Program-made: the position numbers and the translations under genes
Shown: one piece after another, positions 13,612 to 52,815 of the stretch
Position numbering within the stretch: the first letter of the stretch is position 1
Layout: the number at the start of each line of letters is the position of its first letter
The notes under the pieces: model-generated
What the model was told of the DNA's origin: nothing
The model's database searches: none
Seen by the model: the letters and a program-made list of their open reading frames with translations, nothing else
Virus record (IMG/VR): IMGVR_UViG_3300023184_000027
Location: 143,953-207,952 of that record
DNA length: 64,000 nucleotides
Strand: one strand, 5' to 3'

Positions 13612-13617
13612 CTGTTT

Positions 13618-22400: not shown

Positions 22401-22643
22401 AGTTACTCGTATTCTTTCATATTTTATATCTGAAGGTGGCCAACTAATACTCGTTAACACTCTTATACGACCTAAACTATTATTACTAGAAGAAAAAGTC
22501 CCATTAATGCACCAAATATTTTTTATTTGGTTTGGCATTAACTCCACCTGTCTTTTCCAAACAGAATCAGACAAATTTTGAAAAGTTATAGTTATTTTTT
22601 CATCACCATCATTTATTACCACTAGTCTTTGACCTATTGACAT
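16500..22643 (-). CDS. Giant surface/virion protein: two PKD-like + DUF285 (BspA-like) repeat blocks, four Fn3-like repeats, Pro/Thr stalks
   Basis: TIDWGDGT x2; many [20 protein letters not shown] repeats; long TPTPTKTP runs; no signal peptide. Confidence 0.85.
19230..19625 (-). repeat. Longest Pro/Thr (mucin-like) low-complexity tract
   Basis: About 130 codons of [10 protein letters not shown]; shorter tracts near 17810-17905, 18215-18285, 18880-18930, 21500-21690, 22320-22410. Confidence 0.9.
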
Positions 22644-22667: not shown

Positions 22668-23771
22668 TTATGTTGGTATCTCAACGGCAAAACAAATTTC
22701 ACCATGTTCTCTTATTAATCTTTCCATATCAGCAAATGAAATATAGGAGTGTCCTGATTGACCCCAAGATTTTCCCCAACTATTTTTAATTCTGAAAAGT
22801 CTCGTCACCGTATTAACACCATTAATAACATAAGCGTGTCCTCCAGCAATACGACCACTAATTCTAATTAAACCATTTCTATCTGGATAAAACATCCCAT
22901 TATACCAATTAGTTCCAACAACAACAGGACCTAAATTTAAAACAGAATTTATTAAACTTGTTAAATCAAAACCCCAATAATAGGAAGAAACTTTACGAAC
23001 ACTTTGTAAATATTTAACACCACCTCTAACTGATGTACCATCATAATTCTCACCAACCCATTCGTCAACTCTTTGAGCGTTTTCATAAATAACCCTAGGC
23101 GGTATTATCGGAGCAACCCCACTTTGAGGAACCGGACCATCTTCTAACCAATGAGCCCAAGCATATCCAACACATTGGGGTGTATTACCTTGGTTACCCC
23201 ACCATCCATTATCATCCCAGTATCTATTGGTAATTCTAACAGGTACGGCACTTAAAAGATTATTTATAGAATATTTATGGTCTCTTTCATCAGGTATATA
23301 TTGTCTACCTAATTGATATGTTTTATTAATACTTTCTATAAGAACAATTGGTTCGTTAACACAACAAGGAAATTCTGAAACATAACAACTATCATACACC
23401 AAATCATCGGCAATGAATGATTCCTGAACATTAATATTAAGTTTTTCTCTAATTGGTAAGATAAGTACACCATCAGAATTTCTTAACATAAACTCACCTT
23501 CATACCTACCAACACGATTGGTGTCTTTGGATGTGAATTGGTAATATATGTAATATTCTGGTTCGGCATTGGGGTCTATTGAGGTTTTCTCAACAAATCC
23601 ACCCGGTCTTGAAGTAATTTTTGGTATTCCCGTTTCTACATCTACCATTGAAAAGAAAATTGACGATAACTCTATGGTTTTCATAAAATTATTGTAATCA
23701 CTTCTTCCATCTTTTACGACTTGGAATTTTAAAACAGGTAAAGTCGAGTTTTTCTTAATAAAAAAATCCAT
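22668..23771 (-). CDS. BppU-like baseplate/fibre-attachment domain fused to papain-like (C1) cysteine peptidase
   Basis: N-term FFIKKNSTLP...YQFTSKDTNRVGRYEGEF; C-term NQGNTPQCVGYA, GGHAYVING, IKNSWGKSWG. Confidence 0.8.
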   Translation of the reverse strand: MDFFIKKNSTLPVLKFQVVKDGRSDYNNFMKTIELSSIFFSMVDVETGIPKITSRPGGFVEKTSIDPNAEPEYYIYYQFTSKDTNRVGRYEGEFMLRNSDGVLILPIREKLNINVQESFIADDLVYDSCYVSEFPCCVNEPIVLIESINKTYQLGRQYIPDERDHKYSINNLLSAVPVRITNRYWDDNGWWGNQGNTPQCVGYAWAHWLEDGPVPQSGVAPIIPPRVIYENAQRVDEWVGENYDGTSVRGGVKYLQSVRKVSSYYWGFDLTSLINSVLNLGPVVVGTNWYNGMFYPDRNGLIRISGRIAGGHAYVINGVNTVTRLFRIKNSWGKSWGQSGHSYISFADMERLIREHGEICFAVEIPT

Positions 23772-23817: not shown

Positions 23818-25494
23818 TTAACTCTCTTTTCTTAATGAACCATCGTAATGTTCAAATCGGTCGTGTTCTGTTGGTGTTAACAATAATAATCCCGGATTGA
23901 TTTTTCCTTTGACGGTTTCTTGATAACTATATGACATAAGGGTCTGTTCAAATGGATGCGCCCACTTTGTTTCTAAATAACATTTGTAATTGCCCTCTCT
24001 TGATAACACAATTGGCCAATTTGAAAGGTAGACTTCTCCTGTAACATATGGTAACCCTTTGTGAATATGAATTTCTTTAAATTTTGTTTTTGGCGAATTG
24101 GGGTCTAAACCTTGAACAGGTAATTTAGGGTTGTTTGGCCAATGTTTTTGTCTAAAATCTTGGGGTACATTATACCAACTCCATTGTACACTATTATCAC
24201 CAAAAAACTCACTAAAATTAAGTTTAAGAAAATCAAAATTTTCTTTAGCAAGTATATCTAATGATTTTTGATATAAGTTATCAACAAAACGGGGGAATCC
24301 ATTTCTACAAACTTCACCTTTTTTAGGGTAAAACGCCATATCATCTTCAAACCACCAATAACAATCTAAATCAGTTTCGTCAAAATGTTCAGCAACAAAT
24401 ACTCTACCACCAACAATACCAATATTATCTTTTTTAATATGTTCAAAACCATATTGCTCACATAGTTCAATATATCTCGGTGTTGTGGATAAATCTGTTG
24501 AGTTGTCTAATAAAAATTTCTTTGGTTTCTCCACAAAATCTTTATCGTAGTCCAACATAGATTGGATAAGAACTTCTAATTGTTTTGGTGAATTAAATGT
24601 AATGACATAAAGACCAACTTTTGATGTGTCTAAATTATTCACAATAACATCTTTAGATACTTCCGATTTAACCTCAACCGTCATATCTTTTAAATCTTCA
24701 AAAAACTTACCCATTAACCCATTACCATCTATTTCTGAATAAGTAATTAAGTTTGGGTACTTATATGTCATAATAGTAAATAATGATTCTTCAGTACCCA
24801 TTAAACCATTTGAAAGGGTTTCATTCATTAATCCGTAATAAATGTTATTAATTTCGGATATAACATCTTTTTTTCCACCAAAGAAACCTGCTCGAGCAAC
24901 CATATTAACAGGTTTACCTGCTAAATCACATAACTCTTGATACTTGAATCCGTGAATTTCACTATTAGTTTCATAAGGAAAACAAACAAAGTGGAAATTC
25001 TTAACTAATTTAGGTAATTTATCTAAAACTTTGTCATGAGTAAAGTATCCAGGGTGGATTGTATTGGTTAATCCGGCATCAATCCAAAACATATATTCCG
25101 AATCAAACTTATCTAATATTTTCGCATCATGTAAAAGATAAACTTTTGACATAACCAAAGGGTTATACATTTCTAATTTGGCTTGTGTTGAATCAGTTAA
25201 CCAACCGACCTGATTATACCAATCAGGGTTTGTTCTTATCTTTTTAATTTTATCGTAAAATTCGTTATTTTTAAACCAAGATAAATCTCTACGAACAAAT
25301 TGAGTGTTTTCACTTCGTCGATTATTTAATACAAAATTCTCTAATTCTTCATCTCCAAAAATTATCATATTAACATCAACTTGTAATAATTGTTGAAACT
25401 TATCTAAATAATGTTGGAATGAACGGGACCACCCTTCTTGAAGGTCTCCTCTACCTATGTCCCATAATCCTGTAACTAATGTTATTTTACTCAT
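23818..25494 (-). CDS. HtrL/YibB-like glycosyltransferase fused to a GT-A domain
   Basis: ITLVTGLWDIGR, FWIDAG, GFFGGKK, GTEE; second domain LYVITFNSP...LLDNS...FEDD. Confidence 0.7.
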   Translation of the reverse strand: MSKITLVTGLWDIGRGDLQEGWSRSFQHYLDKFQQLLQVDVNMIIFGDEELENFVLNNRRSENTQFVRRDLSWFKNNEFYDKIKKIRTNPDWYNQVGWLTDSTQAKLEMYNPLVMSKVYLLHDAKILDKFDSEYMFWIDAGLTNTIHPGYFTHDKVLDKLPKLVKNFHFVCFPYETNSEIHGFKYQELCDLAGKPVNMVARAGFFGGKKDVISEINNIYYGLMNETLSNGLMGTEESLFTIMTYKYPNLITYSEIDGNGLMGKFFEDLKDMTVEVKSEVSKDVIVNNLDTSKVGLYVITFNSPKQLEVLIQSMLDYDKDFVEKPKKFLLDNSTDLSTTPRYIELCEQYGFEHIKKDNIGIVGGRVFVAEHFDETDLDCYWWFEDDMAFYPKKGEVCRNGFPRFVDNLYQKSLDILAKENFDFLKLNFSEFFGDNSVQWSWYNVPQDFRQKHWPNNPKLPVQGLDPNSPKTKFKEIHIHKGLPYVTGEVYLSNWPIVLSREGNYKCYLETKWAHPFEQTLMSYSYQETVKGKINPGLLLLTPTEHDRFEHYDGSLRKES

Positions 25495-25495
25495 A

Positions 25496-26254
25496 TTATC
25501 TTTCTAAATATTGTAATTTATAAAACTTATCGGCGTTATCAGATGCACTTTCTGAGCGGTACCACCAACAACCACCTCTTTCATTTGGTAAATGTCCGAT
25601 AATTGGAAATGATTCTACTCTTGGGGAGAAATCGGTATCTTTATCATAACTAACTACCCATTTTTCAATATTGTGTTTACCCATATATGCTGATAAAATT
25701 ATATCGTCACTCCAAGATTCACCAACAAATTCAGTAAAAAAATCGGATTTAAAAAAACTTCTCTTATATGATGCTGTTTTGTAACCCTCAATAATCTTAA
25801 CTCTAACATCTTGTGTAACTGTTGTACAAAAATGACAAGTACCATTCAAAGCCGACATACCAGCAAACCCAATTACAGCATTTGGGTATTGTTTTCTTTT
25901 TTCTAAATGATATTCTATAAAACCATCTTCGTAAGATAAATCATCATCAACAATAATAATAATAATATCTTCATTTTCGTCTGTTCGTAAAATTGTTGGT
26001 AAAATTTTAGTCATAGACCCATAATCATCAGTTCTAAATATTTTTAATTTTGAATCGGTAATTTCCGACAACCAAGAAGGTATTGAATACTCTTCGTTTG
26101 TTTTTTTAACAATATATGGTATGTTAAGATGAATTTCATAATTAGTATATGAAAGGGTTAATAATCTATTTATAACTGGTTGTAAACCCCCATTTGGGTC
26201 GTGGTAATTTAGTCTTGAAGGAATAGTTGTTAAACTAATAATTATTTTTTCCAT
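25496..26254 (-). CDS. GT-A fold glycosyltransferase
   Basis: IIISLTTIPSRL, DYGSMTKILP, IVDDD, SDDIILS. Confidence 0.75.
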   Translation of the reverse strand: MEKIIISLTTIPSRLNYHDPNGGLQPVINRLLTLSYTNYEIHLNIPYIVKKTNEEYSIPSWLSEITDSKLKIFRTDDYGSMTKILPTILRTDENEDIIIIIVDDDLSYEDGFIEYHLEKRKQYPNAVIGFAGMSALNGTCHFCTTVTQDVRVKIIEGYKTASYKRSFFKSDFFTEFVGESWSDDIILSAYMGKHNIEKWVVSYDKDTDFSPRVESFPIIGHLPNERGGCWWYRSESASDNADKFYKLQYLER

Positions 26255-26263: not shown

Positions 26264-26959
26264 TTATTTATTTTTATTAATATCGTATTTTAAAAACAAA
26301 GTTTGTCTCCCATTAAATAATGGGATATACCCTTCTTCTAATAAAACAGGAGATAGTAAAGCATCTTTACCACCATCATTTGTTATGTAATCAGTATCAT
26401 CAATTAAAATTAAATTTGTGTCTGATAGTTTATCTTTTGATGCGTAATACGCCTCTAAATGTTTTTCAGCATACATTGGAGTACCTTTATCCCAACCATC
26501 TAAAAATAAGACATCAATTTTAGATGGAAATTCTTTTAAAAATTCTATACCGTCTTTTGGTATTACAATATTTAAATTATTAGGTACCTCTCGACCTAAA
26601 TTAGAATAAGACCATTTAACACCATTAATACAATTTATATCAATATCTACGGTATGTACATCAAACCCTGCTTCTACCCAAAAAAAACCTCCGTGACCAT
26701 CACAACAACAAGGGGGTGATAAATAAGAATTGTTTTCACTATTATAATAATCAACACATCCTTGTGTAACAGATAATCTTGTTGACCCAATTTCAACAAC
26801 GGTTTTCATTTGCAAATAGTTAGCGATTTCTATAGCTTTTTTTAAATAATATGCGGGTTTAGAACGTTTAAAATCATAATCTTCTCCGGTTAAATTATCG
26901 TATGTCCAAAATTTCTTATCAATTTTGAAATTATGAACCATTTCATATATTTTTTTCAT
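26264..26959 (-). CDS. Class I SAM-dependent methyltransferase-like
   Basis: VVEIGS, HTVDID, DGIEFL, IDVLFLDG, ILIDD. Confidence 0.7.
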   Translation of the reverse strand: MKKIYEMVHNFKIDKKFWTYDNLTGEDYDFKRSKPAYYLKKAIEIANYLQMKTVVEIGSTRLSVTQGCVDYYNSENNSYLSPPCCCDGHGGFFWVEAGFDVHTVDIDINCINGVKWSYSNLGREVPNNLNIVIPKDGIEFLKEFPSKIDVLFLDGWDKGTPMYAEKHLEAYYASKDKLSDTNLILIDDTDYITNDGGKDALLSPVLLEEGYIPLFNGRQTLFLKYDINKNK

Positions 26960-26964: not shown

Positions 26965-27648
26965 TTACATTATAGGGTTTAGATATGAATCTCCATTTAT
27001 TGTTAAATCAACGGAATGATATCCACATTTTTCCGAAAAATCATTAACTATTTTTTGAGCATCATCTAAAGTTAAATCATTATGAAAATTATTTTCAAAT
27101 AAAATAAATGGTTTGATATTATTTTTAATCAAATATCCCATCATATCTTTTATAATTGGTAAATCTCTATTTTCAGTATCTATTTTAATAAATGTAATTT
27201 CATTTGGTAAAATAGTATTTATTTTTTCTAAAAAATAATCCATTTTATAAAATTTAGTTTCACCATAAGATTTTGAAACTTTAGATAACCCTAAGTTAAT
27301 ACTATCATCTAAATCTTTATTTGACCAATAATCAATTCCCGAATCGTCAAAAAGAAAATCCCCCTCAACATCTGACAACCCAAAATTATGTACGGTCACC
27401 TCAAGATTATTTTTAAATTTTTCAACCATATATTCACTAAGTCTTTTAGATGCCTCAACAATTATACATTTATCTACTTTATATTTTTTAGACACTTCAT
27501 CATAAAATTTACCAACATTCCCCCCAATATCAATAAATGAAACATTCTTAATATCTTTAGAATCAAGATAATCAAATAACCATTTTAATTCTATTCCTAT
27601 GTGTCTTAAAACAATTGTTTCATCCCAATATTTTATTGCATTATTCAT
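26965..27648 (-). CDS. FkbM-family methyltransferase
   Basis: FIDIGGNVG, VEAS, HNFGLSD, FIKIDTE. Confidence 0.8.
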   Translation of the reverse strand: MNNAIKYWDETIVLRHIGIELKWLFDYLDSKDIKNVSFIDIGGNVGKFYDEVSKKYKVDKCIIVEASKRLSEYMVEKFKNNLEVTVHNFGLSDVEGDFLFDDSGIDYWSNKDLDDSINLGLSKVSKSYGETKFYKMDYFLEKINTILPNEITFIKIDTENRDLPIIKDMMGYLIKNNIKPFILFENNFHNDLTLDDAQKIVNDFSEKCGYHSVDLTINGDSYLNPIM

Positions 27649-27667: not shown

Positions 27668-28438
27668 TTATTTTAAATGTGGGTTTATTTTTAATTTATC
27701 TATATTCACATAAGCATCAATACAACCTCTAACCCAAATTGAATAATCAACATCTCTATCAATTATATTAGAAAATGAGGCTCCTTGATTAAAAATTAAA
27801 GGAGATGACATATAAACTTTTAAATCATTTTTTAGTATATTTTCACCATTTTCGAATGAATTAATTTGCCAACAATTTTTTTCAGTTAGTTGAGAAATGA
27901 AATAATCTATCGGAAGCCTAGAACTAAAATGTTTGTTATCGGCATAACGTAAATTTTCGATTAAAAATTTTGCATATTTTAATGAACCAAGATATGCGTG
28001 GGACATTAAAGTTTTCTTAGTTTTTACCAAATTATTGGAAATATAATCTGTGTCTTCTTCAGGTCTAACACCTAACCATAAAACATCGGGTTTATATTTT
28101 TCTAAATCTTCAATTATTGATTTAGAAACTTTTTTTCTATCAACCGTTTCTAACGGTATTGTTTGAGAATAATAATATTCTGTTTTTATATCATCCTCCA
28201 AATAAAGAACATATCCCCAATTATTTTCTACCTGTTTTTTAGCGATTTCAATATGGCTTTGAGTACACCCATATTTATTAAAATTTGGGTCAGATATGGA
28301 TACGGCCTCAAATATTTGAACACCCTCAATCCCACTATCAATAAGTTCTTTTTCAGCGATTAATAATCTATCAGTTCTTTCTTTTAAATTTATTAAAAAC
28401 CCGGTATCACAAAGATACTCCCCAAACCATTTAATCAT
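27668..28438 (-). CDS. GT25-like glycosyltransferase
   Basis: LINLKERTDR, GCTQSH, LEDD, SHAY, PIDYF. Confidence 0.75.
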   Translation of the reverse strand: MIKWFGEYLCDTGFLINLKERTDRLLIAEKELIDSGIEGVQIFEAVSISDPNFNKYGCTQSHIEIAKKQVENNWGYVLYLEDDIKTEYYYSQTIPLETVDRKKVSKSIIEDLEKYKPDVLWLGVRPEEDTDYISNNLVKTKKTLMSHAYLGSLKYAKFLIENLRYADNKHFSSRLPIDYFISQLTEKNCWQINSFENGENILKNDLKVYMSSPLIFNQGASFSNIIDRDVDYSIWVRGCIDAYVNIDKLKINPHLK

Positions 28439-29331
28439 ATAAAATTTTTTTCTTTTAATATGTCATACAAATTATCTTCACTATTTAATTTGTCAAGAGT
28501 GTATTCGTAATTCTGTTTAATTGAGTTATTGTGAGAATAATAATCATCATTTTTTAATATTAATTGAATAATCATATCAAGGTTTGAAAATGATTCATCA
28601 AAATTAAAATCTACTTTATCGATATTTGGTGAAAAATAAAACACTGACTCTTCATTATAATTTTTATCAATTAATCTTGACCCCCAATATATCGGTATTG
28701 ACCCAGTTAAAAAACAATCATTAAGTTTTTCAGAATTAAACCCTTTTTGTAATGAGTTCTCACAACAAATTGTGTATTTGTAATCCACCATAGCATTTCT
28801 AAATTCTCCCGAAAAATTCTCAACACCACTACCATAAAAATCTATAATATTTTCATTTTTATATTTTTCATAAATTAAATGTCTAATTCTATGCCCTTCT
28901 GAAAAATTTTTATATGAAAATGACATTGAAATATTTTTTGTTTTTTTATGTAATCCAATATGTTCTTCTGATAACCAAGAAGTTGTTAAACATTTTGTGG
29001 AATAATGAAATTTATCAGGACGAGATTCTATTAAATCTCCCAATAATTGTAAATTGTGTGTGATTATTAAATCAAATTTTTCAAAATCCGTTCTAATATA
29101 ATCGTACACATCAGTCCATGGTGGGTTGGTATATGGTTCTAATAAAATGCAAATATTGTAATTACCATCGTTTGGTATGTCAATATGTGTTTTTTTAATT
29201 AAATTATCGGTATACACATTTAATTTTCTTCTAACACCATCTCTTTTCCATATTATTTTTTTAGAATTTAAATAAGGTGTTAAATATGTTTGATGTCCAA
29301 AACTATTATCGTTTAATGTGATTTCTATCAT
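28435..29331 (-). CDS. GT10-like (fucosyltransferase-type) glycosyltransferase
   Basis: YKYTICCENS...SEKLNDCFLTGSIPIYWG matches the alpha-1,3-FucT motif. Confidence 0.75.
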   Translation of the reverse strand: MIEITLNDNSFGHQTYLTPYLNSKKIIWKRDGVRRKLNVYTDNLIKKTHIDIPNDGNYNICILLEPYTNPPWTDVYDYIRTDFEKFDLIITHNLQLLGDLIESRPDKFHYSTKCLTTSWLSEEHIGLHKKTKNISMSFSYKNFSEGHRIRHLIYEKYKNENIIDFYGSGVENFSGEFRNAMVDYKYTICCENSLQKGFNSEKLNDCFLTGSIPIYWGSRLIDKNYNEESVFYFSPNIDKVDFNFDESFSNLDMIIQLILKNDDYYSHNNSIKQNYEYTLDKLNSEDNLYDILKEKNFI

Positions 29332-29335: not shown

Positions 29336-30583
29336 TTACAAATTACCTGTTATTCTTTCACACCAACCTTTTGACGTACTAAACGGCCAAACAACCCAAT
29401 ACTTTGGTTTATGTGCTGTTTGAAATTCTCTCCAAACTTTACAATACCCATCAGGGTCTCTCATCATATTATTAATCTCATTAATATCGGCGTCTCGTCT
29501 ATTTAATGTTTCGTCGTTTTCATCGTGAAAAGCAACAACCCAAAATTCATAATCTTTTTCCGGAACTTGAGTAAATCCAATATCAATACAATGTTTAAAA
29601 ATACTGGCATAACTCGCCAACCATTCTTCTTCAGTTTCATAAATTGTTGGATTCGGAGCGTAATGTTTGTCTAATGTGTATTGTTGAACAGCCCTATTTG
29701 AAAATTTAAGACCTGAATAAATTTCATAATCTTTTAATGTTCTTTCAGTTCCAAAACCATAGTAACTAAAATCCATAGTAACCTCCTCACCATCCATACC
29801 AAATAGTTGACGGTTTTTTAAATGAGATAATTCGTTTTTCTTACCCCATTCTTTATCGTCATCCCATTGTTTGGTTCTACCCTTACGAGTATATTCGTGC
29901 CAAATAACGGTTTTATGTGGGTGGAATAAATCATATCCGTGAGTATATGCTCTAACGGCAATTGAGATTTCTTCACCGTGGAAATAGAACTCTGGGTCGT
30001 GTTGAACCTCAACACTAAATTGACCTAATGTGAAGGCCATGTGTGCAGAATAAAATCTTGAAGTAACTGGTTCTTTAAGGTTTTCCCATCCCGGAATTGT
30101 TTCAGGTAAGAAGAAGACAGCTCCTTCAGGTATGAATCTATCAAACGACATTCTCCATGGGTCTGTGACTCTTCCTGCCGGGTCATTGTCAGGGTCAAAT
30201 GAAGAAACATATCCTGTTAATAAAGGTTTCTTAAATCCTTTCTTTTGAAGTTGTTTAATCATTTTGATTAAGGTGTCGTCCCAATCTTTCTCAAATCTCA
30301 TATGAGAGTCAATTTGTAGGGTATATTCCTCACCTTTATATAATTGTTGTACTTGGTTTCTTGCCCAACAAACACCTTTAGATTCGGTGTATAAAACGTC
30401 AACAACTCTAAATCTTTTATCTTTTGCGTATTCAGATAAATCATCAAACCCATCTTCCGGGTGATATTGACGACAGATTCCAATTACCAAATTTTTAGGT
30501 TTTTTTGCATTCTCCAACATTGACTTAATTGTTGGAATAAGTTGGGGGTCACGATAGGACGCGATTTGTACAAAAATTTTCAT
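29336..30583 (-). CDS. GT60-family polypeptide/hydroxyproline O-alpha-GlcNAc transferase (Gnt1/OGNT-like)
   Basis: IFVQIASYRDP, GVCWARN..Q.LY.GE.Y.LQIDSHMRF...WD, FHGEE, RAYTHGYDLFHP. Confidence 0.85.
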   Translation of the reverse strand: MKIFVQIASYRDPQLIPTIKSMLENAKKPKNLVIGICRQYHPEDGFDDLSEYAKDKRFRVVDVLYTESKGVCWARNQVQQLYKGEEYTLQIDSHMRFEKDWDDTLIKMIKQLQKKGFKKPLLTGYVSSFDPDNDPAGRVTDPWRMSFDRFIPEGAVFFLPETIPGWENLKEPVTSRFYSAHMAFTLGQFSVEVQHDPEFYFHGEEISIAVRAYTHGYDLFHPHKTVIWHEYTRKGRTKQWDDDKEWGKKNELSHLKNRQLFGMDGEEVTMDFSYYGFGTERTLKDYEIYSGLKFSNRAVQQYTLDKHYAPNPTIYETEEEWLASYASIFKHCIDIGFTQVPEKDYEFWVVAFHDENDETLNRRDADINEINNMMRDPDGYCKVWREFQTAHKPKYWVVWPFSTSKGWCERITGNL

Positions 30584-30637
30584 ATTTATTTTAATTTAAA
30601 TAAAAAATAATGTTTAAAAAAAAAAGATAAATATAAA

Positions 30638-30680
30638 AAAAAATAACTTTAACATTGTTAATCTGTTAAAGTTATTTTTT
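30638..30680 (-). terminator. AT-rich 17-bp hairpin terminator after fibre gene
   Basis: aaaaaataactttaaca-9nt-tgttaaagttatttttt; TATTTAT motif follows at 30626-30634. Confidence 0.65.
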
Positions 30681-30683: not shown

Positions 30684-33600
30684 TTAAATTTCATCACAAT
30701 AATCGAGAATTGGTGATGTGTTTGGATAACAATTAATTGTTAGGAGAGTATTTACTGGAACAAAAACCGATATAAATAATCCCTCGCAATTACGATAATT
30801 ATAATAACATCCGGTGTATTTTGTAGTTTCAATTCCCATATCTTTATTAGAATTAAGTACGTACTGAATACATTTTGAAACACTTTCTATTGTCGTTGGT
30901 ATTTGGATTGGTGGTAAAAGACTTTCATCAATTTTGACACAACGAACAGATAATCCATTTTGGTTATTCGGTTCAATTACATTCCCTGATTTTTTGACAT
31001 AAGTATCTAATTCAATAGTGTTTTTAAAAGAACTGATTGTTATTGTTCTATTATAATTCAACAACCCTTTTGATGCCCAAAATGATGCGGAATAGCGAAA
31101 AGAATCCTCATATTCAAAAAAACCGGTAGTTTGATTATCACCTCTAACTCCGGCTGGTAAAATACATAACCCGAACTTATCTGATGTTTTAAAATTTTTA
31201 TTAGTAATCCAATGTCTTGTTCCTATTTCACACATTTTAGCACCTGATGTGGGTCCACCCAATGACTCAATTAGATTCTCCCACTCAACACTTGTTGGTA
31301 TACGATACCCAATTGGAGCTAAACCACCTGAATCTGTATTATTCACAGCATAGGAGTTATAAAGAAGACCATAACCTGGTTCACTGTTGACTGTTATTTT
31401 AATATTCCAAATATTAGATACTCTAAGACCATCGATTAAACATGTAGCACCAATACCCTGATTAAAACTAATGATATTTGGTGTGATACCACTTTTAGTC
31501 CCGATTAACGGGCCTATTGTTGGTGATGGTTCTAATCCAAACTCATCACCCTCTTTGAATACATAAAGACTTACACTTGGTGATGTTTTACTATATTTAA
31601 CAACTACAAGATATTTTTCGTTAAAATTATATGTGGTGGTACTAACCGATTGAGGGGTTGTTTGGGTATCATCAAATGATAAACCAAATTTAAATGTTGA
31701 TGTGTTTATTTGTATTATAAATATTCTACCTCTTTCACCACCATCTTTACTTTCTCTAAAACTAAAAAACTTTCCACTAACAGTTGTTAATATTGATACC
31801 TTAATAAGAAATGAACAATAAATATTGTTTGACTCTGCCCCGTTAAATGTGTTATAAACGCTTTCTCCAATAGCATTTAAAGAAATTGAGTTTTTACTCC
31901 AAGTTTCATTATAATAGGTAAAAGTTAATCCTGTTGGTACTACTTTAATCGGGTTAACCCCTGAATTTGTTGTGTGAGATAACCATTGATGTTTGTTCCC
32001 TAAATAATCAATGGTTGATTGATATGTTAAGTTAGTTGTTGCCAAATAATCAAAATTATCGTCTAAAAGTATGTTTTGATATGTGTCTATATAATCGTAG
32101 TTTGGTCTAGTATTAGGGTAACACCAAGCACCTTCTGTTTGTATCATCCAATCACTATCGCTCAAATCATTACCATTACTAATTTTGGTGGTCCCATTCG
32201 CATAAACTTTCACATCCAAATTGGATGTTCTCCAAAAATTACCACCCACGTATACATCACCACTTTTTACAGTTCCAATACGAGGTGTCAAAGGTGGGAA
32301 ATTATGTGAAGAATTTTCTATACTAACGGTAATGGTCACAGGCCCTTCGGGTGTGATAATTGTAAATTTGTTCCTCGATGGGTCCGTACTTATATATTCT
32401 ACACCAGCACTCCATGACCCATCCCATGTAGAGATAGTCACATAGTTTTGTTTTTGATAATATTTGTCACGTGCCGGAGCTACGATTGCTACATTCGGTG
32501 TTTTTGTCATTTTTAAATTAAACTCAATAGAGTTATTTAACCCTATTTCGTCTACACCTTCGTTAACAGTTAGGTGTCCAATTTGTGTCTCACCATAAAC
32601 ACCCCAATTAAATATTTTAATAGAACCGTTTATTGGGTTCGATAAAGTCCAGTTACCGGATGGGTTTTTGTAATCATAATCAACAAAGGTTAATGTTGAC
32701 GTAGACAAATAAATTGGTTTTGGTGTTGGTGTTGGTGTCTTAGTGTTTGTTGGTGTTGGTGTTGGGGTTGGATTAGGGGTTCTTGTTTGTGTTGGTGTTT
32801 TTGTTTGCGTTGGTGTTGGCGTCGGAGTTTGGGTTAATCCTGGTGTTTGTGTTGGTGTTGGCGTCGGAGTTGGTGTTACATTACATATTTCACACTCCTC
32901 ACTAAATTCATAACCATTCCAATATCTAACATGAAGACCACTAAAATAATATCCCTCTGGTGCATCATCATAACATTTAACACCATCGGAATATTGGATA
33001 TTTGTTGCTTCACAAAAATAAGGACTATCCAAACAAAAACTCTCCGTTGTTCCACGGTCAGTACACGCTTGTTCAAAAGTACCGTGTTGAAGTGGTAGAA
33101 TTTTTCTACCAAGTGTTGGTGTCGGTGTTGAAGTTGATGTTCTAGTTGGTGTAGGTTGTAGCTTTTGGGTTTTAGTTGGTGTTGGTGTTTTAGTCGGGGT
33201 TTTAGTTGGTGTTGGTGTTGCACGAGGGGTTTTTGTAACTGTTGGGGTTGGGGTTGGGGTGGCCAACCAAGACTCATCTGATTGGCATGGATTATATTTA
33301 ATACTTGAGGTTAAAGTTGATGTTGAGCCTGTTGCGTAGTATATAGTGTTATTTTTATTTTTGTAATTATCTTTGTTAGCCTCGTATTTTACTGTTCTAA
33401 ATTCTAAACTACAATTAAATTTAAAATTGGCGGTTGATGAAATTTTAAAAGTATAAACATCTCTATTGTTAACATTCGCACTGTCCTTAGTGAGTATATT
33501 AAGATTATTATTAATTAAATCATGTCCTGGGATTCTTTGGGGTAGATAGCTCGTGTTCCAAGTAGTTGCAGAATACCAAGGTGTTTGAGTGATATTTGAA

Positions 33601-34214
33601 GTTGATTTAACTTCTTTATATGGATTAGTCTGTAGAAACCAATGTGTGAAAGAGGTGTTAGGAAATGTTGTTTTATTGATGATGGGATACGTAGTACCAG
33701 AAGGGTATACTAATGGTTCAGTGGAGCTAGATTTTGATTTAACAACGTTAACCGTCTTAGATGATTTTTTAATTTCAACACCATTTTTAAATAAATGTGT
33801 TTTAAATATGAATGTTTGGTTTGTCAATACTTGAATTTCTAACGCAACTTCTCTAAGATAAAAATCTCCCGCATCAAAAGAAAAACTACTAGTGTTAGCG
33901 GAGTATAAAAATCCTGAGGTATTTCCTGAACATACTTCGTTCTTAATATAAATTGGGAATGTTAATAGTTTTTTATCGGAAAAATTAGTTTTTTTTGCAA
34001 AAATAGATGTTGCATTAATAGGTACTTCAACTCTAACTCCAGGGTCGGTAATTAATCTATCTTGAGTTATACCTGAAGCAATAACAGTGCTAGTACCTAA
34101 CGGATTGTATATTTTGGCGGGGTACGATGTTTTCCCTACAATGTAGTAATTAATATCGTAAATACCATCGATGTCTCCTTGACTTACTTTTATATCAAAT
34201 TGTTTATATTCCAT
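30684..34214 (-). CDS. Pro/Thr-stalk virion protein with FISUMP (Fib_succ_major) domain split by a lectin-like insert
   Basis: FWRTSNLDV, GAWCY, YGLLYNSYAV, LAPIGYRIPT..EW, GLSVRCVK; TPTPT tracts. Confidence 0.8.
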   Translation of the reverse strand: MEYKQFDIKVSQGDIDGIYDINYYIVGKTSYPAKIYNPLGTSTVIASGITQDRLITDPGVRVEVPINATSIFAKKTNFSDKKLLTFPIYIKNEVCSGNTSGFLYSANTSSFSFDAGDFYLREVALEIQVLTNQTFIFKTHLFKNGVEIKKSSKTVNVVKSKSSSTEPLVYPSGTTYPIINKTTFPNTSFTHWFLQTNPYKEVKSTSNITQTPWYSATTWNTSYLPQRIPGHDLINNNLNILTKDSANVNNRDVYTFKISSTANFKFNCSLEFRTVKYEANKDNYKNKNNTIYYATGSTSTLTSSIKYNPCQSDESWLATPTPTPTVTKTPRATPTPTKTPTKTPTPTKTQKLQPTPTRTSTSTPTPTLGRKILPLQHGTFEQACTDRGTTESFCLDSPYFCEATNIQYSDGVKCYDDAPEGYYFSGLHVRYWNGYEFSEECEICNVTPTPTPTPTQTPGLTQTPTPTPTQTKTPTQTRTPNPTPTPTPTNTKTPTPTPKPIYLSTSTLTFVDYDYKNPSGNWTLSNPINGSIKIFNWGVYGETQIGHLTVNEGVDEIGLNNSIEFNLKMTKTPNVAIVAPARDKYYQKQNYVTISTWDGSWSAGVEYISTDPSRNKFTIITPEGPVTITVSIENSSHNFPPLTPRIGTVKSGDVYVGGNFWRTSNLDVKVYANGTTKISNGNDLSDSDWMIQTEGAWCYPNTRPNYDYIDTYQNILLDDNFDYLATTNLTYQSTIDYLGNKHQWLSHTTNSGVNPIKVVPTGLTFTYYNETWSKNSISLNAIGESVYNTFNGAESNNIYCSFLIKVSILTTVSGKFFSFRESKDGGERGRIFIIQINTSTFKFGLSFDDTQTTPQSVSTTTYNFNEKYLVVVKYSKTSPSVSLYVFKEGDEFGLEPSPTIGPLIGTKSGITPNIISFNQGIGATCLIDGLRVSNIWNIKITVNSEPGYGLLYNSYAVNNTDSGGLAPIGYRIPTSVEWENLIESLGGPTSGAKMCEIGTRHWITNKNFKTSDKFGLCILPAGVRGDNQTTGFFEYEDSFRYSASFWASKGLLNYNRTITISSFKNTIELDTYVKKSGNVIEPNNQNGLSVRCVKIDESLLPPIQIPTTIESVSKCIQYVLNSNKDMGIETTKYTGCYYNYRNCEGLFISVFVPVNTLLTINCYPNTSPILDYCDEI

Positions 34215-34253: not shown

Positions 34254-37200
34254 TTATGATAAACAGTTAAAGTCAACGGAAAATTCACCGGTTAAGATGT
34301 TATATGTGTATAATCCAACACAAGAAAGGTTTGAACAACCCTTACCATAAACATCAAACGAATCAAAAGGGTATTCACATAATAGCGAACCTTTTTCTAT
34401 TGTATTTTTAAAACCATAATTACCATTACTAATCATTTCACCACCTGAATAGACTGACATTTTTATTCCGACTACACCATCTTTAAGTTGTCCGTACCAA
34501 TCTGCTTTACAGTTAAGTTGAATTGATGTTACACTACCATTAAGTTTTAATTTTTTAATATCAACGTATACACTTTCTAAACCAGTCGATGATGTATTAT
34601 CTCCTCCCCACCATAAATAAGGTCCACCATATTTACCACTCTTTCTTATGCTCCCTTGTTTACAATATCCAACCGGAATAGACTCCATATAAGGGGTTGT
34701 TTCACCATTTACGTATAGTGTGGTCAAAGTATCTAAATCCTGTCCAGATGTTTGTGAAAAACTATATGTAAATACAACATAATCAGCATTAAGTATTATT
34801 GGTATTTTTGTTGGTGTTGGTGTAAGTGTTGGTGTAATTGTTGGTTTTGGTGTCCTAGTTGGTGTGTGGGTTGGTGTTTGAGTTGGTGTTGGTGTTGGTA
34901 CACCAATTTCTTGTGCGATGAAATTATATACAGGGTTAAGAACGCCTAAATTTTTTCCATCTATGTAAAAGGTGATATGCTTAGTTGATATTAATACTCT
35001 AGCAACATATGTCATTGGTTGTGTGTAATCCACATTAAATGTGTAGTAATCGGTAACATTTTCACAGTTTGATAAACTGGATAATAAAGTACCCCCTTTA
35101 GACCATTCATTCTCAATTGTGGTTGATGTTACACTAGAAAAGAATATATCGTTTTTATATATTGTTAATGTAATAGGAACGCCACCTGTTGATGATTTTA
35201 TTTCTAAAGACGCAGTTCTTTCTGTGTATGGACTTAATAATTTAAACTCATCACATTTTGAAAATGATATGGAATCTCTTGTATCGTTAAAAACAAACCC
35301 AAATCTATTATCAGGTGATAATGTACTATCACTTTTAAGTCGATATTTAAATGGTATTATATTAGGTGGTGTGAAACAACGTAATTTATCTATTGACCAA
35401 TTAGACCCTCCAATTGGTGAAATCGCAACAATTCTAATTGTTGTTACACCAGAAGTTGTTTTATTAAATTTTAATCTAATATTTCCATCGGCAATATTTA
35501 TGCCATAATACTTATCGACACCTATTTGAGGTGATGGTGTTGAGGTTCCATAAAATCTGTCCCCGTCACTCGCAATGTCTCTTAAATCAAAAGATACGTT
35601 AATTATTGGTGTAATATGTGGTCTCCATCCATTATTTTCGTATATATATCTATTTAATGATTTTACTTTAATAATCTCGTCAATATAATATTGGCGTTCA
35701 TCACTAAACAATTTATTCCCAATAAATAAAGAATCACAAACCAATTTGTTATCCCAATAAATTTGGAATCTATCGGGAAGTTCTGCAGAATCAAAATCTA
35801 ACGATGTTATTCCGGTTAATGTTCCAATATTTGTTGTCATCTCATAATAACCTTTACCAAAATTTGAGATTTGATTAAAACCTTCACCACAAGGTATAAC
35901 TATGACGTTATTATTTTTACATAAATATGTCGACCCAATTGTGTACGTAATGTTATTTAATGGTGATTTTGTGATTATACTATTTATAGTAATTTCAGAT
36001 ATAATATCGGATGAACTAAAATATGTACCATAAGGTATTAATGTTTTTGATAATGTAGGTGATGTTGTTGCGGTATATGTTTTAGTTTTATTACCACTTT
36101 TAACATCAACAGATAAACTAACCTCATTGTGTGTTGGTGTGTTAGCATTTGTTGTTTTACTAACACCAACAATATAAAAACCTTTAGATGTTTTATCATC
36201 ACAATTTTCAGAAATGTTTAATATAATTTCATCCGGTTTACTATAATAAAAAGGTGTATAATTAATCCAATCAATTAAAGGTAAATAAAACCCTTCAGGT
36301 GCTGAAACATATGAACCACCTGAAAATATTAATAAGTCATTAATTGATGAATAATCAGAAGATGTTTTTTTTACCAAACCTTGATAACATTTATCATTAC
36401 TTTCTAATGTTGTTGGGTCAAAAGTTCGGGAATCATCCATTAATAATTTAGTTTGTGTTAATGAAGTGATAGAGGTATCCGTTAAAAACCAATTACTAAT
36501 ATATGATGGGTAAAAAGAATTGGTTTGGGTTTCATTATTAATTCTTATTATTTTCCCAGATTCAACCTGATATGTTTTAATAGGTTGGGTTGGGAGTATT
36601 CTTGAAGGGCTCCCATCAATAGTCCCTCCGTATGGCGCACCTGTGTAGAACCCTTTTAAGGCTTTATTACAACCTGATGGGTCTAAATAAACGTTTCTAC
36701 CAACAGTCAAACCAAATGTGTCTCTGTTATCAAAAAATAATCTAACGGATTCTGAAACAACTGGTGATTTGGTTGTCCCAAACTCAACCCATGATATATT
36801 TGTATATTTTGAATCTAAAATCCCCATATATATGTCGGGGATTGATTCAGAATAGTTCCCATGTGTTATAGCAAATTCATACGATGAATCCAATAATGCT
36901 TTTGCTTTGTTATTAGCATCTAATTGACTGATACAACTAAACACTTGTCCCGCAGGAATTGTGATTTTTGATGATGTAAAAATTTCTAAATCACAAGAAT
37001 TGTCGGGGATTTCTTGTTCTAACAGTGTGTTAAAATAAGTAAAGTTAATACCGTTTTTACATAATGGTTCAGGTTTACCTGATATGTAAGGTAATATTAT
37101 TAGGCGTTCCCAAGATGTGACTAATGTGGGGTCATCGGGCATTATTGAGGATTGACTAGATTGTGTTATCGTTTTTGCACCTTCTTGGAAATAATCATAA

Positions 37201-45806: not shown

Positions 45807-45815
45807 TTAATTATG
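45083..45815 (+). repeat. Direct repeat copy 1 (~730 bp)
   Basis: Colinear with 48474-49205 up to and including the next ATG. Confidence 0.95.
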
Positions 45816-46718: not shown

Positions 46719-46722
46719 TATT

Positions 46723-49748: not shown

Positions 49749-49756
49749 ATAATTAT

Positions 49757-51901: not shown

Positions 51902-51902
51902 C

Positions 51903-51928
51903 AAAAAACCCCAATTAAGGGGTTTTTT
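51903..51928. terminator. Bidirectional intrinsic terminator
   Basis: AAAAAACCCC-AATTAA-GGGGTTTTTT between convergent genes. Confidence 0.85.
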
Positions 51929-52803: not shown

Positions 52804-52815
52804 ATTTGTTTTTTT

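What the first reader, a model, noticed from the sequence alone, without database searches (positions are those of the whole stretch)
29336..30583. GT60 polypeptide GlcNAc-transferase heads an operon sandwiched between Pro/Thr mucin-like proteins
Seen: ASYRD, DSH and FHGEE motifs. It is the first gene of a 7-gene block (GT10, GT25, two methyltransferases, GT-A, HtrL-like), with a TATTTAT motif upstream and PT-stalk genes on both sides. Known: GT60 enzymes put alpha-GlcNAc on Skp1 hydroxyproline in Dictyostelium/Toxoplasma and on Thr of Trypanosoma cruzi mucins; they are related to ppGalNAc-transferases. Inference: it initiates mucin-type O-glycans on TPTPTKTP stalks. No prolyl hydroxylase is in the window, which favours Thr as acceptor.
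Basis: partly seen in the sequence, partly recalled or inferred. Interest (0 to 1): 0.85.

Follow-up and report, generated by a model that had tools for sequence, protein, structure and literature searches.

The report
Phage GT60 glycosyltransferase beside PT-linker fibres
A freshwater jumbo phage carries a protein-type (GT60) sugar transferase at the head of a swappable glycan operon set among fibre-like proteins with Pro/Thr linkers, and the same enzyme-plus-PT-repeat pairing recurs across bacteria, which points to an unrecognised mucin-like O-glycosylation system in phages and bacteria.

Summary
The ORF at 29336-30583 (-) is intact and a confident member of Pfam PF11397 / CAZy GT60 (E 3.5e-70). 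ASYRD, DSH and FHGEE lie at residues 8-12, 92-94 and 201-205. D92, H94, E204, E205 and H229 are invariant in 42 homologues. An AlphaFold model (pLDDT 95.6) has only polypeptide GalNAc-transferases as its top PDB matches.

The window is the last 64 kb of a 208-kb freshwater jumbo myophage contig. The gene follows a terminator hairpin and a conserved TATTTAT element. It heads a tight 7-gene block that ends in an HtrL-like double glycosyltransferase.

In 80 related phage contigs GT60 and HtrL stay fixed while the 1-9 genes between them are exchanged (43 cassettes). The gene just upstream carries PT linkers in 43 of 51 architectures.

In bacteria of many phyla, GT60 homologues sit beside PT-repeat proteins: 19/403 ORFs within 3 kb against 1/381 beyond 5 kb. 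These include T6SS VgrG spikes with (PT)n tails. Phage XacN1 has the same GT60-HtrL pair near a PT-linker giant protein, and its virions contain PAS-positive proteins.

It remains biochemically untested; sugar and acceptor are inferred.

The parts
30638..30680 (-). Terminator-like hairpin (17-bp stem) followed by a T run, between the upstream PT-protein gene and GT60
   Evidence: RNA fold dG -15.3 kcal/mol, z -6.46, 0 of 200 shuffles as stable; sequence read. It is A/T-rich, so the G+C-based terminator scan missed it.
30627..30633 (-). TATTTAT element 44-50 nt upstream of the GT60 start; candidate phage promoter element (function inferred)
   Evidence: Present at -55 to -40 in 29 of 50 distinct orthologous upstream regions against 10.1 +/- 2.9 (maximum 19) in shuffles. 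Not enriched window-wide.
29336..30583 (-). GT60 (PF11397) soluble GT-A glycosyltransferase: catalytic domain about 1-295 with the DxH motif (D92, H94) and H229, plus a C-terminal beta-sandwich domain about 296-415
   Evidence: No hydrophobic segment.
28435..29331 (-). GT10-like (fucosyltransferase family) glycosyltransferase
   Evidence: PF00852, E 3.3e-7, 30.6 bits against cutoff 23.9.
27668..28438 (-). GT25-like glycosyltransferase
   Evidence: PF01755, E 2.3e-8, 34.6 bits against cutoff 24.
26965..27648 (-). FkbM-family methyltransferase
   Evidence: PF05050, E 4.8e-9; TIGR01444, E 6.6e-9.
26264..26959 (-). Probable class I SAM-dependent methyltransferase
   Evidence: Only weak spermine-synthase-fold hits. 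ESM Atlas nearest named clusters are Methyltransf_24 / class I SAM MTases, scores 0.93-0.96. A lead, not a test.
25496..26254 (-). Probable GT2-like GT-A glycosyltransferase
   Evidence: No Pfam hit. Weak HpsN glycosyltransferase hit, E 0.0016. Atlas nearest clusters carry Glycos_transf_2, scores 0.95-0.99. DDD motif in the sequence.
23818..25494 (-). HtrL_YibB-like domain (3-252) plus a second domain that reads GT-A-like by eye (no family hit); conserved last gene of the operon and conserved partner of GT60 in phages and bacteria
   Evidence: PF09612, E 3.2e-20. 41-44% identical full-length homologues in the same four cultured phages that hold GT60. Present downstream of GT60 in most related loci.
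22668..23771 (-). Papain-like cysteine peptidase, a conserved neighbour; many orthologues carry PT linkers
   Evidence: phrog_16701 peptidase, E 2.6e-55; PF00112, E 1.6e-5; PT flags on orthologues.
16500..22643 (-). 2047-aa protein: eight DUF285 (BspA-type LRR) modules separated by PT linkers (8 PT/PS-rich segments; the longest, 134 aa, at residues 1003-1136); candidate acceptor
   Evidence: PF03382, E 3.4e-228, 8 stretches; PT segments.
30684..34214 (-). 1176-aa protein with three PT linkers and a C-terminal Fib_succ_major domain, directly upstream of GT60; candidate acceptor
34254..38723 (-). 1489-aa protein with one PT linker (residues 1273-1309) and three hydrophobic segments (371-444); candidate acceptor
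40851..41969 (-). 372-aa Thr/Pro-rich protein (T 23%, P 9%) with five PT segments between small Cys-containing modules; candidate acceptor
42043..54076 (.). Second sugar island: GT4 fusions, RmlD-like reductase, UDP-galactopyranose mutase, methyltransferase, GT9-like proteins, APS kinase and sulfotransferase; probably supplies or extends the same glycans (inferred)

Best explanation
The gene encodes a soluble, cytoplasmic, DxH-type GT-A glycosyltransferase of family GT60, carried by a freshwater jumbo myophage that probably infects Bacteroidota.

Proposed mechanism: during infection it transfers the first sugar onto Thr (and perhaps Ser) in the (T-P-T-x)n linkers of the phage's own giant fibre/adhesin-like proteins, before or during virion assembly. 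By homology that sugar is an alpha-linked HexNAc, probably GlcNAc from UDP-GlcNAc.

The downstream enzymes would then extend and methylate the glycan: GT10-like, GT25-like, a GT2-like protein, two methyltransferases, and the conserved HtrL-like double transferase.

GT60 (initiator) and HtrL are fixed while the genes between them are swapped among related phages, so related phages would display different glycans on the same kind of PT stalk. Stiffened, protease-resistant, antigenically variable stalks are the likely benefit.

Shown: family membership, fold, catalytic motifs, lack of membrane segments, operon structure, the conserved-ends/variable-middle architecture, and genomic linkage to PT-repeat genes in phages and bacteria.

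Inferred: polypeptide acceptor, Thr as the residue, the sugar, the order of steps, and the biological benefit.
For: Family and chemistry:
- PF11397 at E 3.5e-70.
- Invariant D92/H94/H229/E204/E205.
- Model pLDDT 95.6; its best ~42 PDB matches are all polypeptide GalNAc-transferases, the mucin-type initiators (E 6e-11 to 8e-9).
- Characterised GT60 enzymes are polypeptide alpha-GlcNAc-transferases (PMC8724618).

Soluble machinery:
- No TM segment in any GT or MT of the window, and no Wzx/Wzy/polyprenyl-phosphate transferase family found.

Operon head:
- Terminator hairpin upstream.
- Positionally conserved TATTTAT.
- Gaps of 19 nt or less through HtrL.

Phage comparative evidence (80 IMG/VR loci):
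- GT60 is 78-100% identical; 43 distinct cassettes of 1-9 genes lie between GT60 and HtrL.
- The ORF immediately upstream, on the same strand, bears PT linkers in 43 of 51 non-redundant architectures, although it belongs to different protein families. The rate for other ORFs is 95/953.

Second phage lineage:
- XacN1, Xoo-sp13 and RAS14 share only the GT60 and HtrL genes with this phage. In each, the single PT/PS-linker protein in 40 kb is a 3100-3300-aa protein beside the baseplate wedge, 3-8 kb from the module.
- XacN1 virions show at least two PAS-stained glycoproteins (PMC5852040).

Bacteria:
- PT-repeat ORFs number 19/403 within 3 kb of GT60 homologues against 1/381 at 5 kb or more (Fisher p 3.7e-5).
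- They occur in Gemmatimonadota, Acidobacteriota, Myxococcota, Verrucomicrobiota, Planctomycetota, Actinomycetota, Bacteroidota and Pseudomonadota.
- The label needs at least 16 changes on the GT60 tree, so it is not one inherited cluster.
- Some neighbours consist of little more than a Tat-like signal plus PT repeats.
- VgrG spikes next to T6SS-embedded GT60 genes end in (PT)n.
- In 20 further bacterial loci the neighbours include no polysaccharide export or polymerase families.
Against: - No biochemical datum for any prokaryotic or phage GT60. Donor sugar, anomeric outcome and acceptor all rest on homology at 12-14% structural-alignment identity to GT27 and on a Pfam match to eukaryotic GT60.
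- PT linkers are common flexible spacers, and they could sit near glycan genes only because both lie in a hypervariable host-interaction region.
- Only 18 of 76 bacterial loci show a PT-repeat gene within 3 kb.
- Several partner families in the window (GT25, GT9, HtrL) are best known from LPS core synthesis.
- At least one PT-linker protein of a near-identical relative lies about 50 kb from GT60.
- The XacN1 glycoprotein bands were not identified.
- The C-terminal beta-sandwich gave no informative structural match.
Confidence: 0.55

Rival explanations
1. The operon builds or remodels a non-protein glycan: host LPS core/O-antigen, capsule, or a free or lipid-linked oligosaccharide. This would change the infected cell's surface, for example to block superinfection. 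GT60 would act on a sugar or lipid acceptor, and the PT proteins would be unrelated neighbours.
For: - This is the published reading of polymorphic glycosyltransferase clusters in jumbo (cyano)phages (PMC7824862).
- GT25, GT9 and HtrL_YibB families are known from LPS core loci (Pfam descriptions).
- Glf and an RmlD-like enzyme are typical of O-antigen pathways.
- The conserved-ends/variable-middle layout also resembles O-antigen loci.
Against: - No flippase, polymerase, ABC exporter or polyprenyl-phosphate priming transferase in the window, and no membrane segment in any enzyme.
- None among 41 neighbours of GT60 homologues in 20 bacterial loci.
- Every characterised GT60, and all top structural matches, use polypeptide acceptors.
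- Bacterial contexts are protein or peptide centred: T6SS clusters, PqqD-like domains, a C39 peptidase ABC transporter, PT-repeat proteins.
Confidence: 0.2
2. It is a protein glycosyltransferase, but the acceptors are other virion proteins rather than the PT linkers: capsid, sheath, the (G-T/S-S)n collagen-like fibre at 57489-63869, or the glycine-rich proteins.
For: - Mycobacteriophage glycans sit on capsid and tail-tube C-termini (as summarised in PMC12619734).
- The window encodes a 2126-aa collagen-like protein with 549 residues of G-(T/S)-S repeats. Bacterial collagen-like spore proteins are O-glycosylated on Thr (BclA3/SgtA, PMC7157674 abstract).
- The XacN1 glycoprotein bands are unidentified.
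Against: - The recurrent partner of GT60 across phages and bacteria is a PT-repeat segment, not collagen repeats or capsid genes.
- Some bacterial partners have nothing but a signal and PT repeats.
Confidence: 0.15
3. The enzyme is Skp1-Gnt1-like in its acceptor and needs hydroxyproline, made by a prolyl 4-hydroxylase encoded elsewhere in the phage or by the host. The glycans would sit on Hyp, not Thr, of the PT linkers.
For: - The best-studied cytoplasmic GT60 (Gnt1) uses Hyp (established knowledge; PMC8724618 context).
- Green-algal GT60 proteins are fused to 2OG-Fe(II) oxygenase domains (Atlas cluster).
- The linkers are about 40-50% Pro.
Against: - No 2OG-Fe(II) oxygenase hit in the window, nor in the further ~46 kb of the contig and a close relative read through precomputed Pfam hits.
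- None among the conserved bacterial neighbours that were scanned.
Confidence: 0.06
4. The enzyme glycosylates phage DNA (hypermodified bases) to evade restriction.
For: Phage glycosyltransferases are classically DNA-modifying (cited in PMC12619734, and PMC5852040).
Against: - No relation to known DNA glucosyltransferase families in Pfam or PHROGs.
- Bacterial homologues sit in T6SS, peptide and PT-protein contexts.
- A 7-gene oligosaccharide-building operon with methyltransferases is not what base glycosylation needs.
Confidence: 0.02

Closest known systems
Trypanosoma cruzi / Dictyostelium polypeptide alpha-GlcNAc-transferases (CAZy GT60, mucin-type initiators of protists)
   Same: Same Pfam/CAZy family (PF11397). 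DxH GT-A catalytic domain. No ricin-type lectin domain (PMC8724618). The known acceptors are Thr in Thr/Pro/Lys-rich mucin repeats, like the TPTPTKTP linkers here.
   Different: Those enzymes are Golgi membrane proteins of eukaryotes. This one has no membrane segment, is phage-encoded, and carries an extra C-terminal beta-sandwich (residues ~296-415) that the Pfam model does not cover. Activity here is untested.
Gnt1, the cytoplasmic Skp1-hydroxyproline GlcNAc-transferase of Dictyostelium/Toxoplasma (GT60)
   Same: Same family; soluble and cytoplasmic; first enzyme of a multi-step glycan built by further soluble transferases.
   Different: Gnt1 modifies a single Hyp on one protein (Skp1) after prolyl hydroxylation. 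No Skp1 and no prolyl hydroxylase were found here, and the candidate acceptors are long repeats.
Animal polypeptide GalNAc-transferases (GT27)
   Same: Best structural matches (top ~42 PDB hits, TM 0.45-0.54, E down to 6e-11). DxH plus a downstream His. They initiate dense O-glycans on Thr/Ser next to Pro.
   Different: Only 11-19% identity in the structural alignments. No Glycos_transf_2 / Glyco_transf_7C / Ricin_B Pfam hits. Different C-terminal domain. Donor probably differs.
Xanthomonas phage XacN1 ORF334 + ORF330 (also Xoo-sp13, Stenotrophomonas phages CM1 and RAS14)
   Same: Full-length homologues of GT60 (45-48% identity) and of the HtrL-like protein (39-44%), about 5 kb apart and close to a giant PT-linker protein. 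XacN1 virions contain PAS-positive proteins, and its authors proposed phage-encoded glycosylation.
   Different: A different phage lineage: the PolB of this window finds no XacN1-type polymerase. The intervening genes differ (a carbamoyltransferase there). In the tree their GT60 is sister to T6SS-linked bacterial enzymes, whereas the window's clade sits among Bacteroidota-labelled sequences.
Mycobacteriophage virion glycosylation (Freeman et al. 2023, as cited in PMC12619734)
   Same: Phage-encoded transferases decorate the phage's own structural proteins in the host cytoplasm.
   Different: Other glycosyltransferase families. Acceptors are C-terminal tails of capsid and tail-tube subunits. 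No PT linkers, and no GT60/HtrL module reported.
Serine-rich-repeat adhesin glycosylation (GtfA/GtfB plus variable transferases) of Gram-positive bacteria; self-encoded fibril glycosylation of giant viruses
   Same: Works alike in outline (from general knowledge): a conserved cytoplasmic initiator puts HexNAc on Ser/Thr repeats, and strain-variable transferases extend it. In giant viruses and chloroviruses, virus-encoded clusters glycosylate virion proteins (PBCV-1 is mentioned in PMC5852040).
   Different: Unrelated initiator families (GT4). Export through an accessory Sec system. Eukaryotic hosts in the virus case.

Membership tests
CAZy GT60 / Pfam PF11397 (polypeptide alpha-GlcNAc-transferases) | Significant sequence match to the family profile over the catalytic domain | tested here: met
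   PF11397 at E 3.5e-70, 237.6 bits against cutoff 21; two stretches, the best covering profile positions 95-350 of 352.
CAZy GT60 / Pfam PF11397 (polypeptide alpha-GlcNAc-transferases) | GT-A fold with a DxH metal-binding motif and a downstream His | tested here: met
   D92-S-H94 and H229 are invariant in 42 homologues. Confident GT-A model that superposes on DxH-type GT27 enzymes. Metal binding itself was not tested.
CAZy GT60 / Pfam PF11397 (polypeptide alpha-GlcNAc-transferases) | No C-terminal ricin-type lectin domain (the stated difference from GT27, PMC8724618) | tested here: met
   The C-terminal 120 residues model as a beta-sandwich (pLDDT 95.3) with no significant PDB match and no beta-trefoil hits. 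No Ricin_B Pfam hit.
CAZy GT60 / Pfam PF11397 (polypeptide alpha-GlcNAc-transferases) | UDP-GlcNAc donor, retaining transfer giving alpha-GlcNAc | not testable with these tools
   Needs an enzyme assay or a ligand-bound structure.
CAZy GT60 / Pfam PF11397 (polypeptide alpha-GlcNAc-transferases) | Polypeptide acceptor (Thr or Hyp) | not testable with these tools
   Only indirect support: linkage to PT-repeat genes in phages and bacteria and glycoproteins in XacN1 virions.
Skp1 hydroxyproline glycosylation pathway (PhyA + Gnt1 + extenders) | Partner prolyl 4-hydroxylase (2OG-Fe(II) oxygenase) supplying Hyp | tested here: not met
   No such Pfam family in any window ORF, nor in a further ~46 kb read through precomputed hits. 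About 98 kb of the contig remains unread.
GT27 polypeptide GalNAc-transferases | Sequence membership (Glycos_transf_2 + Glyco_transf_7C catalytic unit, ricin B lectin domain) | tested here: not met
   No such Pfam hits. 11-19% identity in structural alignments. Fold-level kinship only.
Phage virion-protein glycosylation systems | Phage-encoded transferases next to structural or fibre genes | tested here: met
   Tail sheath, baseplate and fibre-like genes surround the two sugar islands.
Phage virion-protein glycosylation systems | Glycans demonstrably attached to virion proteins | not testable with these tools
   Only the PAS staining of XacN1 virions by others. This phage is uncultured.
Lipid-linked polysaccharide (O-antigen/capsule) loci | Priming polyprenyl-phosphate transferase plus flippase/polymerase or ABC exporter | tested here: not met
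   None found by Pfam in the window. No multi-pass membrane protein among the enzymes.

The most novel reading that the evidence does not exclude
GT60 plus the HtrL-like double transferase would be an ancient, mobile prokaryotic and phage module for mucin-type O-glycosylation of Pro/Thr repeats. Its proposed targets are the exposed stalks of contractile-injection machines (jumbo-phage fibres, T6SS VgrG spikes with (PT)n tails) and Tat-signal PT-repeat proteins. The exchangeable genes between GT60 and HtrL would give each phage strain its own fibre 'glycotype'. On this reading the eukaryotic GT60/GT27 mucin initiators, currently traced only to the last eukaryotic common ancestor, would descend from this prokaryotic system.
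Probability: 0.3. Interest if true: 0.85.

Novelty: new variant of a known kind. Interest (0 to 1): 0.7.

Why it matters
- Phage virion glycosylation is known experimentally from very few systems, and its enzymes and acceptor rules are largely unknown. This one is abundant: 432 IMG/VR relatives, more than 7000 90%-identity clusters, and 4686 50%-identity representatives of the family.
- It has a clear candidate initiator and a clear candidate acceptor motif, and a cultured relative (XacN1) is available for direct testing.
- If confirmed, it explains why jumbo phages carry large, fast-changing sugar gene islands next to fibre genes.
- It would give a prokaryotic counterpart, and possibly the ancestor, of mucin-type O-glycosylation.
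- It flags an unstudied glycosyltransferase inside T6SS clusters of Burkholderiales.
- It would supply soluble enzymes for glyco-engineering PT linkers in bacteria.

Tried and rejected
- PDB by sequence (single protein and 42-sequence profile) finds no solved GT60; the only hits are chance-level.
- The C-terminal domain, modelled alone and searched against the PDB, gives a generic beta-sandwich with best E 0.09, so no function could be assigned.
- Megablast of the 10.5-kb region against 50,697 phage records finds no match.
- The sigma-70 promoter scan is at shuffle level (114 found, 114 expected). The G+C-based terminator scan missed the A/T-rich hairpin.
- TATTTAT is not enriched window-wide; only its fixed position upstream of orthologues is informative.
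- NCBIfam has no model for this family.
- I considered that the phage belongs to the XacN1 group. Rejected: the PolB of this window finds Salinibacter and Nostoc phage polymerases at 23-30% identity and no XacN1-type polymerase.
- I considered the recently named freshwater 'moraphages' (PMC12619734) as the lineage. This could not be tested because no sequences were at hand.
- The walk along the source contig to look for a prolyl hydroxylase covered record positions ~98-208 kb only, and the last step landed on a near-identical ENA contig. It was stopped because the remaining look-ups could not finish the contig.
- No paper in the library links GT60/PF11397 to phages beyond a list entry, or to VgrG/PT repeats.
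Full report
**What is at the coordinates.** 29336-30583 (-) is an intact 415-aa ORF.
- It matches Pfam PF11397 'Glycosyltransferase (GlcNAc)', the Pfam model of CAZy GT60, at E 3.5e-70. It matches a full-length PHROG family called only 'glycosyltransferase' at E 2.8e-168.
- In an alignment with 41 homologues of 35-88% identity, D92, H94, E204, E205, H229, R75 and R211 are invariant. D92-x-H94 plus H229 is the metal-binding pattern of DxH-type GT-A enzymes.
- The protein starts directly with the first beta-strand and has no hydrophobic segment, so it is a soluble cytoplasmic enzyme.

**Structure.**
- AlphaFold2 with this alignment gives pLDDT 95.6 and pTM 0.90.
- Against the PDB, the first ~42 Foldseek matches are all polypeptide GalNAc-transferases (GT27: T1, T2, T4, T7, T10, T12, PGANT9, Toxoplasma T3), with E 6e-11 to 8e-9 and 11-19% identity. 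Polysaccharide and teichoic-acid GT-A enzymes follow.
- No GT60 structure is found by sequence.
- Residues ~296-415, which the Pfam model does not cover, fold as a confident beta-sandwich with no significant PDB match. It is not the ricin-type lectin domain of GT27.

**What the window is.**
- It encodes a 1266-aa tail sheath, a family B DNA polymerase, an SNF2 helicase and a collagen-like tail-fibre protein. Baseplate genes lie just outside it.
- It is the last 64 kb of a 207,952-bp JGI metagenome contig (3300023184, Ga0214919_10000030). Related contigs reach 318-322 kb.
- It is therefore a jumbo myophage. Close relatives are very common in metagenomes.
- The nearest non-viral-collection GT60 sequences come from Bacteroidota bins (Saprospiraceae, Lewinellaceae, Chitinophagia), and the window's clade sits among Bacteroidota-labelled sequences in the tree. 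This is a weak pointer to the host.

**The operon.**
- Upstream of GT60 lies a 100-nt A/T-rich spacer with a 17-bp hairpin followed by a T run (dG -15.3, z -6.5), then TATTTAT at -50 to -44.
- The motif is not enriched in the window as a whole. It does occupy -55 to -40 in 29 of 50 distinct upstream regions of orthologues, against 10.1 +/- 2.9 in shuffles, so it is probably a conserved regulatory element.
- Downstream, six genes follow with gaps of 19 nt or less:
  - GT10-like, GT25-like and FkbM methyltransferase (all above Pfam cutoffs);
  - a probable class I SAM methyltransferase and a probable GT2-like GT-A (leads only);
  - a 558-aa protein with an HtrL_YibB domain and a second domain that reads GT-A-like by eye.
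- A second sugar island at 42043-54076 adds GT4 and GT9-like proteins, an RmlD-like reductase, UDP-galactopyranose mutase, a methyltransferase, APS kinase and a sulfotransferase.
- No flippase, polymerase, exporter or polyprenyl-phosphate transferase is present, and none of the enzymes has a membrane segment.

**The PT proteins.** A composition scan finds PT linkers in exactly four of the 42 listed ORFs of 100 aa or more, all flanking the operon:
- 30684-34214 (three linkers; Fib_succ_major domain);
- 34254-38723 (one linker);
- 40851-41969 (five segments; 23% Thr);
- 16500-22643 (eight DUF285/BspA-type modules separated by PT linkers; 8 PT/PS-rich segments, the longest 134 residues).

In a further ~46 kb of the contig and a near-identical relative, four giant structural proteins lack such linkers, and one 1036-aa protein has one.

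**Comparative evidence in phages.**
- In 80 related IMG/VR loci, GT60 is 78-100% identical and almost always followed, after 1-9 genes, by the HtrL-like gene, the peptidase and PolB.
- The genes in between form 43 distinct cassettes among 57 non-redundant architectures. The layout is conserved first enzyme, conserved last enzyme, variable middle.
- The ORF immediately upstream on the same strand carries PT linkers in 43 of 51 non-redundant architectures, although it belongs to several unrelated protein families. The rate for all other ORFs in these loci is 95/953.
- These loci are kin, so this is not 43 independent events. It does show that the PT feature persists while the rest of the protein is replaced.

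**A second phage lineage.**
- Among 50,697 phage records only XacN1, Xoo-sp13, CM1 and RAS14 hold a GT60 homologue (45-48% identity). The same four hold the HtrL-like protein (39-44%).
- The PolB of this window does not find their polymerase, so the two genes travel as a module.
- In each of XacN1, Xoo-sp13 and RAS14, the only PT/PS-linker protein in ~40 kb is a 3100-3300-aa protein next to the baseplate wedge, 3-8 kb from the module.
- The XacN1 paper reports at least two PAS-stained glycoproteins in virions and suggests that ORF328 and ORF334 make them. ORF334 is the GT60 homologue (PMC5852040).

**Comparative evidence in bacteria.** The family has 4686 representatives at 50% identity and occurs in many phyla. 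Several independent contexts point to protein or peptide acceptors.
- Beside GT60 (often with HtrL) lie genes for proteins that are little more than a Tat-like signal or a PqqD-like domain plus long PT/PS repeats. This is seen in Gemmatimonadota, Myxococcota, Acidobacteriota, Halieaceae, Alphaproteobacteria, Acidimicrobiaceae, Verrucomicrobiota and Planctomycetota.
- In 10 Burkholderiales/Neisseriaceae loci, GT60 sits inside a T6SS cluster: TssF-TssG-TssA-fimbrial-like-GT60, then Rhs and VgrG. The neighbouring VgrG ends in (PT)n in Ralstonia, Achromobacter and Paraburkholderia, and in PPPTE repeats in Trinickia.
- In Sphingobacterium-type loci a C39-peptidase ABC transporter is a neighbour.
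- Counting strict PT repeats, 19 of 403 ORFs within 3 kb carry one against 1 of 381 at 5 kb or more (Fisher p 3.7e-5).
- On a tree of 94 GT60 sequences this label needs 19 changes, at least 16 of them forced by well-supported branches. It is therefore spread through the family and not inherited once.
- In 20 other bacterial loci the neighbours are heterogeneous and include no polysaccharide export or polymerase families.

**Interpretation.**
- Thr is favoured over Hyp because no 2OG-Fe(II) oxygenase is found in the window, in ~46 kb more of the contig and a close relative, or among the conserved bacterial neighbours that were scanned. Some green-algal GT60 proteins, by contrast, are fused to such oxygenases.
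- The donor (GlcNAc) rests only on family precedent (PMC8724618).
- The main rival is the published view that jumbo-phage transferase clusters remodel host surface polysaccharide (PMC7824862). It is weakened by the missing membrane steps and by the protein-centred contexts, but it is not excluded, since LPS-core enzymes are also soluble or peripheral.
- Other protein acceptors remain possible, for example the (G-T/S-S)n collagen-like fibre.

**Novelty.**
- GT60 is described in the literature as a protist family traced to the last eukaryotic common ancestor.
- In the searched library, phage GT60 appears only as an item in a CAZy list. Nothing links PF11397 to PT repeats, T6SS or phage fibres.
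- The gene itself is annotated generically in databases.
- What is new is the system-level picture and a directly testable acceptor hypothesis, with a cultured model phage available.
- I rate it a new variant of known kinds (virion glycosylation; mucin-type or SRRP-type initiation), interest 0.7.

Noticed in passing
L142:9986-11347 and 12267-15131; L151:15049-17520; L158:15075-17564; L137:15066-17351; also L111, L125, L132, L157, L160, L163, L166: In Burkholderiales/Neisseriaceae genomes a GT60 homologue is embedded in a type VI secretion cluster (TssF, TssG, TssA, a fimbrial-like protein, GT60, sometimes HtrL and DotU, then Rhs and VgrG). The adjacent VgrG spike ends in a 58-136-residue (PT)n or PPPTE repeat. 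No paper in the library mentions this.
   Followed up: partly
L099:7533-10564; L102:8743-12972; L104:8391-13000; L105:8610-11269: Gemmatimonadota loci share a four-gene module: a P-loop protein whose motif resembles HPr-kinase (by eye; no Pfam hit), a protein with a PqqD-like N-terminal region followed by a hydrophobic stretch and (in L099, L102, L104) a long PT/PS repeat, then GT60 and HtrL-like. This looks like a peptide-modification cluster whose substrate is a PT repeat.
   Followed up: partly
L115:4189-5064; L122:4503-5015; L118:8209-8829; L133:11608-12243; L140:6828-7457: Short proteins made of a twin-arginine-like signal (RRxLLQ/RRQFV) followed almost only by PT repeats lie next to GT60 in five distant bacterial lineages. 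This suggests glycosylation in the cytoplasm before Tat export.
   Followed up: no
window 57489-63869 (-) and 54161-56849 (-): A 2126-aa collagen-like tail-fibre protein has 549 residues of G-(T/S)-S triplets in 12 runs, with almost no proline. Next to it are three paralogous glycine-rich (PF21722) proteins. These genes coincide with the rise in G+C from ~30% to ~41% after 54 kb. The Ser/Thr-rich triplets are another possible O-glycan acceptor.
   Followed up: partly
window 42043-54076: A second sugar island holds UDP-galactopyranose mutase, an RmlD-like reductase without RmlA-C, GT4 and GT9-like fusions, and an APS kinase next to a sulfotransferase. This implies galactofuranose-containing and sulfated glycans made by a phage.
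   Followed up: no
window 1488-5288 (-) and 10544-12082 (+): The tail sheath protein is unusually long (1266 aa; the sheath domains occupy only residues ~970-1257). A 512-aa protein carries a complete Fe/Mn superoxide dismutase in its first half.
   Followed up: no
Tree (L006, L167, L168 versus L111-L166): The GT60 of the Xanthomonas/Stenotrophomonas jumbo phages is sister (SH-aLRT 100) to the T6SS-linked GT60 of Burkholderiales/Neisseriaceae, whereas the window's clade groups with Bacteroidota-labelled sequences. The module seems to have moved between phages and bacteria more than once.
   Followed up: partly
P0122 (2461 aa), P0123, P0124, P0127, P0134, P0141; Atlas clusters: Some proteins hold up to four tandem GT60 domains. 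Viral clusters fuse GT60 to Glyco_transf_7N/7C or to an O-fucosyltransferase domain. Chlorophyte clusters fuse it to 2OG-Fe(II) oxygenase domains.
   Followed up: no
window 34254-38723 (-), residues 371-444: The 1489-aa PT-linker protein has three adjacent hydrophobic segments, the only clear membrane-like stretch among the large proteins of the window.
   Followed up: no
L113, L123, L127, L129 (e.g. L113:7354-9489): In Sphingobacterium/Chitinophagaceae-type loci the GT60 homologue lies near a C39-peptidase ABC transporter and an outer-membrane beta-barrel, a bacteriocin-like export context. This suggests a glycosylated secreted peptide.
   Followed up: no
L088-L091, L093, L096, L097, L100 (MAG bins named Saprospiraceae, Lewinellaceae, Cytophagaceae, Ginsengibacter): Several 'bacterial' MAG contigs holding 57-84% identical GT60 plus HtrL may be jumbo-phage contigs binned with their hosts (most have low G+C, 0.34-0.43, though L090 is 0.50 and L093 0.62). 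If so, they hint at Bacteroidota hosts.
   Followed up: no
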